NCBI RefSeq assembly: GCF_006345805.1
Contig: NC_043022.1
Span: forward strand, 15,066,001-15,130,000
Length of the DNA: 64,000 nucleotides
From: Octopus sinensis
Taxonomy: Eukaryota
Direction: 5' to 3'
Shown here: piece by piece, positions 61,620 through 61,971 of the stretch
Position numbering within the stretch: position 1 is the stretch's first letter
How the letters are laid out: each line of letters begins with the position of its first letter
The notes under the pieces: model-generated
What the model saw: the letters and a program-made list of their open reading frames with translations, nothing else
Databases searched by the model: none
Told to the model about the DNA's origin: nothing
Program-made: the position numbers and the translations under genes

Positions 61620-61763
61620 ACTTGGAATGTTCAGACGAGTTGATGTCAGCCTTGAAAAAGTCATGTCATGTTGAGATATTTATTTGATCTAAAAGATCAA
61701 ATATCTTAAAATGTTTCGATTTTTTCAAGGCTGACATCAATTTATCTGAAACATTCGGAAGTT
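61620..61763. repeat. Foldback inverted repeat centred on 61691-61693, spanning the CARD-only stop codon
   Basis: Exact arms tatttgatct/agatcaaata (10 bp) and ttgatgtcagccttgaaaaa/tttttcaaggctgacatcaa (20 bp), with continuous imperfect pairing between and beyond. Confidence 0.85.
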
Positions 61764-61971
61764 TCTTGAATATATAATCATGTAACTTTCGTATTTGGTG
61801 GTCAGGATTTCTTTCGGACATTATTCCATTTTTATGTCCCTCAGTCAATAAACCATTGGATAAAGCATGATCTAAAAATGATCCGAGATCGTCCACGTGT
61901 TTTACAAAATAAACTCGGGTTTGCATAAATCGTTCCTGAGAAATATGATGTACTTCTTGTTCACTGCTCAC
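61666..61971 (-). CDS. CARD-only protein (101 aa from GTG, or 86 aa from the ATG at 61926); could be a pseudogene
   Basis: Ungapped ~52% identity (45/86 by my count) to the copy 2 CARD; stop follows LLDQINIST; own GGAAGTGAAAC box 92 nt upstream. Confidence 0.65.
   Translation of the reverse strand: MSSEQEVHHISQERFMQTRVYFVKHVDDLGSFLDHALSNGLLTEGHKNGIMSERNPDHQIRKLHDYIFKKLPNVSDKLMSALKKSKHFKIFDLLDQINIST

What the first reader, a model, noticed from the sequence alone, without database searches (positions are those of the whole stretch)
61666..61971. CARD-only ORF: intact and diverged, but starting with GTG
Seen: an ungapped, stop-free 86-aa alignment at ~52% identity to the caspase CARDs, with many conservative changes, far older than the caspase duplications. 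The codon matching the caspase ATG is GTG, and the first in-frame ATG (61926) gives an 86-aa product lacking the start of helix 1. Inference: long ORF preservation argues for function. Near-cognate initiation or the downstream ATG could keep the decoy at low dose. A recent pseudogenising mutation is the alternative.
Basis: partly seen in the sequence, partly recalled or inferred. Interest (0 to 1): 0.8.

Follow-up and report, generated by a model that had tools for sequence, protein, structure and literature searches.

The report
Decaying CARD-only relic of octopus caspase
This is a leftover front end of a duplicated octopus caspase gene, cut off after its recruitment (CARD) domain and lacking its start codon. 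Its copies in the sister species are broken further, so it is most likely an ordinary young pseudogene, not a conserved decoy protein.

Summary
Window 61666..61971 (-) is a stop-free 101-codon ORF with a real CARD: it passes Pfam's cut-off and models as a six-helix bundle closest to the Apaf-1 CARD. It is 49-55% identical to the three neighbouring caspase CARDs. GTG sits where they have ATG. Starting at ATG 61926 would remove helix 1a.

The inference that long ORF preservation argues for function does not hold. The window is Octopus sinensis (CM016884.1), inside an octopod tandem array of intronless CARD-caspase genes.
- The ORF's true relatives are full-length caspases of another subfamily: 71-78% aa over the whole CARD, and 94.6% nt over the 111 nt of O. 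bimaculoides P0022 not lost in an assembly gap.
- Only 12 unambiguous substitutions are specific to the ORF lineage (9 nonsynonymous, 3 synonymous). A neutral copy stays open about 55% of the time after that many.
- The ORF leaves the caspase sequence within 5 nt of the centre of a 52-nt palindrome, so a fold-back rearrangement cut the gene.
- All three O. vulgaris copies also have GTG. Two have lost codons 33-101 and one has a premature TAA; that copy differs at 9 nucleotides, none synonymous.
- RefSeq XP_036369441.1 joins the ORF to the downstream caspase through a junction with no GT-AG.

Verdict: a truncated, start-less gene relic (about 0.72). Expression was not testable here.

The parts
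61666..61971 (-). CARD-only ORF: 101 codons from GTG plus TGA. It is the truncated 5' part of a CARD-caspase gene of the 'MSSEQ/MNTEQ' subfamily.
   Evidence: Pfam CARD above its cut-off. AlphaFold six-helix bundle, pLDDT 87.5. Foldseek top natural hits are Apaf-1 CARD, TM 0.74-0.83, rmsd 1.6 A.
61969..61971 (-). GTG in the position of the ancestral ATG (A-to-G start-codon loss)
   Evidence: Aligned with the ATG of five full-length paralogs. GTG is present in all four copies across two species.
61924..61926 (-). First in-frame ATG (M16). It is a conserved internal Met of the subfamily (RFMQ) and the start used by RefSeq XP_036369441.1.
   Evidence: An M16 start removes helix 1a, residues 12-16.
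61993..62034 (-). Upstream ATG and 13-codon uORF in the leader. It was created where the paralogs have CAGGTAAAA.
   Evidence: Read and compared with paralog leaders. It is invariant in all four ORF copies.
61972..62105 (-). Leader and promoter-proximal region homologous to the caspase genes' upstream regions. It includes the conserved ACCAGGAAGTGAAA at 62063-62076.
61699..61750 (-). Forward arm of the palindrome. It lies inside the ORF, roughly codons 74-91.
   Evidence: the repeat finder pair I1: 52 nt, 81% complementary, 17 nt between the arms.
61630..61681 (+). Inverted arm. Its + strand reads a CARD fragment (SDELMSALKKSCHVEIF). Its first 16 nt supply the last five codons (NIST and the stop) of the ORF's non-caspase tail QINIST*.
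   Evidence: The homology does not extend beyond about 61625 (score 32 against a null mean of 29.5).
61686..61698 (-). Palindrome centre GATCTTTTAGATC. The ORF stops matching CARD-caspase genes at 61687, so this is the truncation breakpoint.
   Evidence: Comparison with O. bimaculoides P0018 and P0022 and O. vulgaris P0014 DNA. The RNA fold of this region is -59.4 kcal/mol, z -10.5.
59808..60779 (-). Downstream intronless CARD-caspase (323 aa). RefSeq fuses its body to the ORF.
57801..57930 (-). Second relic, more decayed: a leader-only remnant of the same gene type upstream of the 316-aa caspase. No CARD is left.

Best explanation
The ORF is an unprocessed gene relic: the 5' leader and CARD of a duplicated intronless CARD-caspase gene in the Octopus sinensis caspase array.

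Inferred history: a fold-back (inverted-duplication) rearrangement at GATCTTTTAGATC replaced the protease domain with about 70 nt of inverted CARD sequence. That left a CARD followed by six foreign codons and a stop. The copy also lost its ATG (now GTG) and gained an upstream ATG with a short uORF.

All of this happened before O. sinensis and O. vulgaris separated. Since then the copies have drifted. O. sinensis still has an open frame by chance, and the O. vulgaris copies have been hit again.

Shown: homology, the breakpoint, the lesions, and the state of the copies in the two species.
Inferred: the mechanism of the rearrangement, and that no functional protein is made.
For: 1. Source. The window is identical to O. 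sinensis CM016884.1 (12,102 bp at 100%). It lies in an octopod array of single-exon CARD-caspases.
2. Parentage. The closest CARDs belong to full-length caspases: O. bimaculoides P0018 at 78% aa and 90.4% nt; O. bimaculoides P0022 at 87% aa and 94.6% nt over the 111 nt outside an assembly gap; O. sinensis and O. vulgaris P0011/P0014 at 71% aa. In about 62 kb of the O. bimaculoides array I found no CARD-only unit or palindrome junction.
3. Breakpoint. The ORF follows these genes up to ...GATCTTTTAGA and then departs, within 5 nt of the centre of a 52-nt, 81% palindrome.
4. Start loss. GTG aligns with the paralogs' ATG and a new uATG lies upstream. Both are present in all four copies.
5. O. vulgaris. 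L002 copies at 5182 and 1870 keep codons 1-32, and the rest is replaced by an unrelated 217 bp. The copy at 20686..20384 has AAA-to-TAA at codon 77.
6. Substitution pattern. O. sinensis versus the O. vulgaris full-length copy shows 9 nt differences in 303: 8 nonsynonymous, 1 nonsense, 0 synonymous. That is 97.0% identity, against 97.4% for the whole 1.9-kb aligned block that contains it. The pattern is very unlikely (P about 0.008) if omega were 0.3 or lower.
7. Lineage-specific changes are 9 nonsynonymous: 3 synonymous. The chance of staying open after 12 substitutions is 0.55.
8. A second relic at 57801-57930 has lost the CARD altogether.
9. No gene product identical to the 101-aa or the 86-aa protein is on record. 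An exhaustive HMMER search found no stand-alone relative of it.
Against: - The frame is intact in O. sinensis and the predicted fold is confident.
- The leader, including the conserved ACCAGGAAGTGAAA motif, is preserved, so transcription is plausible.
- RefSeq includes the ORF in a coding model, which may reflect RNA evidence I cannot see.
- Since the fold-back, the ORF arm of the palindrome acquired 1 (synonymous) change while the inverted arm acquired about 10 substitutions and 1-2 indels (binomial P 0.006). That could mean constraint on the ORF. However, the ORF lineage's synonymous sites are also little changed (3 of about 57), so gene conversion or error-prone synthesis of the inverted arm fits at least as well.
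- dN/dS is high across the whole family, so it discriminates poorly.
- Which O. vulgaris copy is the strict ortholog is uncertain. An assembly gap at 51799-51898 may hide an O. sinensis counterpart of the inverted copy.
Confidence: 0.72

Rival explanations
1. It is a functional CARD-only regulator, a decoy like the vertebrate COP/INCA/ICEBERG proteins, specific to O. sinensis or recently lost in O. vulgaris. It would be translated at low level from GTG 61971 or from ATG 61926 after the uORF, and would bind the CARDs of the array's caspases or their adaptor.
For: - The frame is open and the CARD model is confident.
- The leader is retained.
- After the uORF, no AUG lies between it and M16 (read).
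- The ORF arm of the palindrome changed much less than the inverted arm.
- It has the same genomic origin as the vertebrate CARD-only proteins: a truncated caspase duplicate beside its parent.
- Octopus does encode stand-alone double-CARD proteins elsewhere (P0028).
Against: - The start codon is lost and a uATG has been gained. An M16 start deletes helix 1a.
- All three O. vulgaris copies are broken.
- The two species differ by 8 nonsynonymous, 1 nonsense and 0 synonymous changes.
- Lineage omega is about 0.75.
- Intactness is expected by chance about 55% of the time.
- No matching protein is on record.
Confidence: 0.13
2. It is an alternative first coding exon of the downstream caspase, as in RefSeq XP_036369441.1 (P0010). 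Transcripts would start at the relic's promoter, and the ORF (from M16 to ...FDLLD) would be joined to the caspase body at DPSVYPMKF, giving a caspase with a swapped CARD.
For: - P0010 is exactly ORF residues 16-95 plus the body of the 323-aa caspase, and it spans window 61926..59808.
- Several O. sinensis 'isoforms' show the same CARD-swapping pattern (P0007, P0011, P0015).
- Only about 890 bp separate the ORF's stop from the next caspase's ATG, so read-through is plausible.
Against: - All 10 junction positions compatible with P0010 lack GT-AG or GC-AG. The junction sits in a short microhomology.
- The same holds for P0007: 14 possible positions, none canonical.
- No in-frame canonical donor-acceptor pair gives an intact CARD-caspase. 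The best donors match 5 of 9 consensus positions and cut helix 5.
- The pattern is what template switching, or chaining of alignments across near-identical tandem paralogs, would produce.
- The O. vulgaris positional copies lack the would-be exon's 3' two-thirds.
Confidence: 0.07
3. It is a non-coding regulatory remnant. The relic's promoter acts as a distal or alternative promoter, or its transcript's long 3' hairpin acts as a double-stranded RNA element, for example a substrate for RNA editing or RNAi. Either would affect the downstream caspase. The ORF itself would be irrelevant.
For: - The conserved leader motif is kept in both relics upstream of two caspases.
- The hairpin is very stable: -59.4 kcal/mol, z -10.5.
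- The inverted arm is conserved between the species copies.
Against: - There are no expression data.
- Conservation between these closely related species is no higher than in the flanks.
- The hairpin is fully explained as a by-product of the fold-back rearrangement.
- In two O. vulgaris copies the forward arm has been replaced, so the hairpin cannot form there.
Confidence: 0.08

Closest known systems
Vertebrate CARD-only proteins CARD16/COP, CARD17/INCA and CARD18/ICEBERG in the caspase-1 locus (established knowledge, not tested here)
   Same: It arose by duplication of a CARD-caspase gene followed by truncation just after the CARD. It lies inside the parental tandem caspase array and keeps the parental leader.
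   Different: It has no ATG at the ancestral start and a new upstream ATG. It shows no conservation of integrity in the sister species, and there is no evidence of expression. The parent is an octopod-specific intronless caspase, so any resemblance is convergent, not homologous.
Unprocessed (duplicated) pseudogenes and gene relics in tandem gene arrays
   Same: It shows partial duplication with a rearrangement breakpoint, start-codon loss, substitution at the same rate as the flanks, and independent extra lesions in sister copies. A further-decayed leader-only copy lies nearby.
   Different: The reading frame is still open in this genome and the encoded domain would probably fold.
RefSeq model XP_036369441.1, 'caspase-3-like' [Octopus sinensis] (P0010)
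   Same: It contains ORF residues 16-95 verbatim as its N-terminal CARD and starts at ATG 61926.
   Different: The model continues into the neighbouring gene across a 1.2-kb 'intron' with no canonical splice sites. The genomic ORF instead ends with QINIST*.
Full-length octopod CARD-caspases: O. bimaculoides P0018 and P0022, O. vulgaris P0014/P0016/P0020, and Argonauta hians GAB1602177.1
   Same: They share the CARD subfamily (ISQ.RFMQ.RV.F ... KLMSALKKSKHFKIFDLLD) and the leader. Nucleotide identity is 89-95%.
   Different: They have an ATG and continue in the same exon into a Peptidase_C14 domain.

Membership tests
CARD domain (death-fold, Pfam PF00619) | Sequence match to the family profile above the curated cut-off | tested here: met
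   29.5 bits against a cut-off of 23.9, E 7.8e-7; residues 16-87 match profile positions 5-75.
CARD domain (death-fold, Pfam PF00619) | Six-helix bundle with a kinked or broken helix 1 | tested here: met
   AlphaFold pLDDT 87.5, with helices 12-16 / 19-25, 29-38, 44-51, 56-70, 75-84 and 88-99. Foldseek matches Apaf-1 CARD, CARD8 and caspase-9 CARD with TM 0.68-0.83, although E is only about 1e-2.
CARD-only decoy proteins (COP/INCA/ICEBERG-like) | Derived from a CARD-caspase duplicate truncated after the CARD, and located in the parental cluster | tested here: met
CARD-only decoy proteins (COP/INCA/ICEBERG-like) | A usable start codon giving the complete CARD | tested here: not met
   GTG replaces the ancestral ATG. 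A uATG/uORF lies upstream, and the first AUG (M16) removes helix 1a.
CARD-only decoy proteins (COP/INCA/ICEBERG-like) | Integrity maintained by selection (intact in related species, purifying selection) | tested here: not met
   All three O. vulgaris copies are disrupted. The between-species differences are 8 nonsynonymous, 1 nonsense and 0 synonymous. Lineage changes are 9 nonsynonymous: 3 synonymous.
CARD-only decoy proteins (COP/INCA/ICEBERG-like) | An expressed protein that binds a caspase or adaptor CARD and modulates activation | not testable with these tools
   No RNA, ribosome-profiling, proteome or binding data are available. Exact-sequence look-ups of both possible products found nothing.
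Unprocessed pseudogene / gene relic | Clear homology to functional parent genes, with loss of essential parts | tested here: met
   The protease domain is replaced at the palindrome centre and the ATG is lost.
Unprocessed pseudogene / gene relic | Neutral evolution | tested here: inconclusive
   The rate equals that of the flanks and omega is about 0.75-1. However, intact CARDs of the family also reach omega 0.4-1.5, and the ORF arm changed less than the inverted arm.
Unprocessed pseudogene / gene relic | Independent further lesions in sister copies | tested here: met
Alternative 5' coding exon of the downstream caspase (RefSeq model) | Canonical splice donor and acceptor at the annotated junction | tested here: not met
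   None of the 10 compatible junctions has GT-AG or GC-AG, and there is no good alternative in-frame pair.

The most novel reading that the evidence does not exclude
O. sinensis keeps a young, lineage-specific CARD-only modulator of its expanded intronless caspase array. It would be made at low dose from a near-cognate GTG, or by reinitiation at M16 after the new uORF. That would be an independent, convergent invention of the vertebrate COP/ICEBERG solution, caught at the stage where sister species are losing it. A variant reading is that read-through RNAs from the relic's promoter really do yield CARD-swapped caspases by a non-canonical joining mechanism.
Probability: 0.12. Interest if true: 0.55.

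Novelty: new member of a known kind. Interest (0 to 1): 0.2.

Why it matters
As it stands it matters little for biology. It is one more truncated duplicate in a fast-turning-over tandem array.

It does matter for annotation. RefSeq's 'caspase-3-like' XP_036369441.1, and several CARD-swapped 'isoforms' in this O. sinensis cluster, join neighbouring paralogs at microhomologies without splice sites. They should not be counted as distinct caspases or as evidence of CARD shuffling.

If the minority reading were right, it would be a convergent origin of CARD-only caspase regulators in a cephalopod. That would be of moderate interest to people studying the evolution of cell-death and innate-immune signalling.

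Tried and rejected
- The word-index protein search with the 101-aa ORF found nothing, although P0010 shares 80 identical residues. This is a sensitivity limit for short queries, not evidence of absence.
- Exact look-ups of the 101-aa and 86-aa products found no record. A look-up of P0015 found no record either, because only the longest isoform of a gene is stored.
- The bacterial promoter/terminator scan is irrelevant for an animal genome and was ignored.
- Two literature searches for octopus or cephalopod caspase/CARD work listed no title on this array among the top results. No paper was opened.
- dN/dS was meant to be a decisive test but is not, because intact CARDs of the family also have high omega.
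- I first read the palindrome-arm asymmetry as evidence for purifying selection. I then downgraded it, because the ORF lineage's synonymous sites are also little changed (3 of about 57, against 10 of 57 substitutions in the inverted arm; Fisher P 0.07). Gene conversion, or mutagenic synthesis during the rearrangement, explains that better than protein-level constraint.
- I looked for homology of the inverted copy beyond about 61625 and found none above the shuffled background.
- I looked for the origin of the 217-bp replacement in the O. vulgaris copies and found only low-complexity matches.

Full report
**What is there**

Window 61666..61971 (-) is open for 101 codons from a GTG, with an in-frame TAA five codons upstream. 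The product matches Pfam CARD above the curated cut-off: 29.5 bits against 23.9, E 7.8e-7. An AlphaFold model built with 20 relatives is confident (pLDDT 87.5, pTM 0.78). It shows the CARD six-helix bundle with a broken first helix: H1a 12-16, H1b 19-25, then 29-38, 44-51, 56-70, 75-84 and 88-99. Its best natural structural matches are Apaf-1 CARD, CARD8 and caspase-9 CARD, with TM 0.68-0.83 and rmsd about 1.6 A.

tblastn of the ORF against the window finds three other CARDs on the same strand, at 49.5-54.5% identity without gaps. Each is the N-terminus of a single-exon CARD-caspase: 56185..57135 (316 aa), 59808..60779 (323 aa) and 62981..>64000. The first in-frame ATG is at 61926 (M16) and gives 86 aa without H1a.

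**Where it comes from**

The window is Octopus sinensis. Locus L001 from GCA_006345805.1 CM016884.1 is 100% identical to window 64000..51899 over 12,102 bp. The caspases belong to an octopod family with members in O. vulgaris, O. bimaculoides and Argonauta hians.

The adjacent caspases are not the ORF's closest relatives. The closest are full-length caspases of a different CARD subfamily:
- O. bimaculoides P0018: 78% aa, and 90.4% nt including 58 nt of leader.
- O. bimaculoides P0022: 87% aa and 94.6% nt over the 111 nt not lost in an assembly gap.
- O. sinensis P0011/P0015 and O. vulgaris P0014: 71% aa.

P0016 begins MSSEQGHHISQERFMQ, against the ORF's VSSEQEVHHISQERFMQ. The leader alignment puts the GTG in the ATG column of five intact genes. 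So the GTG is an A-to-G loss of the ancestral start, and M16 is a conserved internal residue, not a new start.

**How it was truncated**

The ORF follows the intact genes up to ...ATATTTGATCTTTTAGA and then reads TCAAATAAATATCTCAACATGA, where they read CGAACAG...GTCTACCCGATG. That point lies within 5 nt of the centre (GATCTTTTAGATC, 61698..61686) of a palindrome. Its arms are 61699-61750 and 61630-61681, 52 nt long and 81% complementary.

On its + strand the distal arm reads a CARD fragment, SDELMSALKKSCHVEIF. It shares the derived 'NV' codons with the ORF, so it was copied from this gene. Homology stops at about 61625. From 61449 onward the sequence is the normal upstream region of the next caspase unit, 98.2% identical to 57807..57136.

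The simplest reading is a fold-back inverted duplication that replaced the protease domain. The tail QINIST* arises where the frame crosses the palindrome centre and reads into the inverted arm. As RNA the region would form a very stable hairpin, -59.4 kcal/mol with z -10.5. I regard that as a by-product.

**Is it maintained?**

O. vulgaris (L002, GCA_951406725.2) has three copies, and all of them carry GTG and the same inverted arm.
- Two tandem copies in the syntenic orientation (L002 5182 and 1870) keep only codons 1-32. The remaining 69 codons are replaced by an unrelated 217 bp.
- An inverted copy (20686..20384) is full length but has AAA-to-TAA at codon 77.

Between that copy and the O. 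sinensis ORF there are 9 nucleotide differences in 303: 8 nonsynonymous, 1 nonsense and none synonymous. That is 97.0% identity, against 97.4% for the whole 1.9-kb aligned block that contains it. Eight of eight changes being nonsynonymous is unremarkable under neutrality (P 0.17) and very unlikely at omega 0.3 (P 0.008).

Polarising with three intact genes gives only 12 unambiguous changes on the ORF lineage, 9 nonsynonymous and 3 synonymous. Eleven of them are shared with the O. vulgaris copy. In simulation the frame stays open after 12 random substitutions 55% of the time. Intactness in one genome is therefore not evidence of selection.

The leader has also changed. CAGGTAAAA became CCGATGAAT, which creates an upstream ATG and a 13-codon uORF at 62034..61993 in all four copies. 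A second relic of the same gene type, reduced to its leader, sits upstream of the 316-aa caspase at 57801-57930.

About 62 kb of the O. bimaculoides array contains the intact relatives but no CARD-only unit. The truncation therefore probably post-dates that split. The array was not covered completely.

**Points in favour of function, and why I discount them**

- Since the fold-back, the ORF arm of the palindrome acquired one (synonymous) change. The inverted arm acquired about ten substitutions and one or two indels (binomial P 0.006). Protein-level constraint would not protect synonymous sites, yet the ORF lineage has only 3 synonymous changes in about 57 sites. Gene conversion from intact paralogs, which is evident elsewhere in this array, or error-prone synthesis of the inverted segment, explains the asymmetry at least as well.
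- CARDs of intact family members themselves show omega of 0.4-1.5. The omega near 1 seen here is therefore weak evidence in either direction.
- RefSeq includes the ORF in a coding model. XP_036369441.1 (P0010) is ORF residues 16-95 fused to the body of the 323-aa caspase, spanning 61926..59808. Every one of the 10 junction positions that reproduce the protein lacks GT-AG. The same is true of P0007. No canonical in-frame pair gives an intact CARD-caspase. These CARD-swapped 'isoforms' look like joins at microhomology between tandem paralogs, from template switching or alignment chaining. They are not splicing.

**What could not be tested**

Transcription, translation and polymorphism were not testable here. 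Exact look-ups of both possible products found nothing. An exhaustive HMMER scan of 1.84 billion cluster representatives returned only caspases and unrelated double-CARD proteins. This is weak negative evidence.

**Verdict**

| Reading | Probability |
|---|---|
| Young, start-less, truncated relic of a CARD-caspase duplicate | about 0.72 |
| Low-dose CARD-only decoy specific to O. sinensis | about 0.13 |
| Non-coding role for the relic's promoter or hairpin | about 0.08 |
| Real alternative first exon of the downstream caspase | about 0.07 |

By origin it resembles the vertebrate CARD-only genes (established knowledge). It fails two defining features of a working member: a usable start, and maintained integrity. 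Interest is low. The useful by-products are the annotation warning and a clean example of fold-back truncation.

Noticed in passing
window 57220-57233, 57863-57876, 60864-60877, 62063-62076 (-): An identical 14-mer, ACCAGGAAGTGAAA, lies about 95 nt upstream of each caspase start and of the ORF. There are 4 hits against 0.03 expected. The core GGAAGTGAAA resembles an ETS/IRF composite site (from memory), so it is a candidate shared immune-type promoter element of the array.
   Followed up: partly
window 57801-57930 (-): A leader-only relic of the same gene type as the ORF lies upstream of the 316-aa caspase. It is 74% identical to the ORF's leader and abuts sequence equal to 61449 onward, with no CARD left.
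   Followed up: yes
L001 4247-8946, L001 10001-12119, L006 3001-28907 (O. sinensis RefSeq models P0007, P0010, P0011): Annotated 'isoforms' join the CARD (or CARD plus half a protease) of one paralog to the body of another, up to 25 kb away. For the two junctions checked (P0010, P0007) the join lies in a 10-14 nt microhomology without GT-AG, so these are probably annotation or RT artefacts. The P0014 ortholog in O. sinensis (L006 3001-3960) also seems to carry a frameshift near 3363-3384.
   Followed up: partly
window 56185-57135, 59808-60779, 62981-64000 (-): The array's caspases are single-exon. They keep SHG, but (read by eye, not aligned to a reference caspase) NTCQ(V/A/F) seems to replace the usual QACxG around the catalytic Cys. 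Some O. vulgaris and O. bimaculoides members (P0003, P0012, P0013) read NTYQ, which suggests loss of that Cys. CARD dN/dS between intact paralogs reaches 1.3-1.5.
   Followed up: no
window 57180-57210 and 60820-60850 (-); paralog leaders in alignment A2: The leaders of intact paralogs contain CAG|GTAAAAATTGATATTTTTTTTACAG|A. This is a consensus-like donor and acceptor only about 27 nt apart, too short for a normal intron. It may be a remnant of, or the sites for, a 5'-UTR intron that uses a distant partner.
   Followed up: no
window 61615-61765 (-): The ORF's 3' end and the inverted arm would fold into a hairpin with roughly 60 base pairs (-59.4 kcal/mol, z -10.5). If transcribed, this would be an obvious double-stranded RNA in an animal known for heavy A-to-I editing. 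An AATAAA hexamer lies at 61684..61679.
   Followed up: partly
window 58188-58755; 62267-62505; 51799-51898: There is a 37-bp tandem repeat of 15 copies between two caspase units, a (TATG)n array of 60 copies upstream of the ORF unit, and a 100-N assembly gap. At that gap, collinearity with O. vulgaris ends. About 4 kb beyond the corresponding point, O. vulgaris carries an inverted [ORF + caspase] copy.
   Followed up: partly
window 2673-3072, 28577-28957, 33647-34028, 43273-43653, 50433-50826, 53737-54103 and others: A dispersed repeat of about 400 bp (83-94% identical copies, both orientations) occurs many times in the window and in the O. vulgaris loci. It is probably a cephalopod SINE-like element.
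   Followed up: no
P0028, P0031, P0033 (not in the window): Stand-alone double-CARD proteins of 205-226 aa appear among the distant hits. One is annotated 'death 3-like isoform X4' in O. vulgaris. So octopus (P0028), and the unnamed sources of the other two, have stand-alone double-CARD proteins unrelated to this relic.
   Followed up: partly
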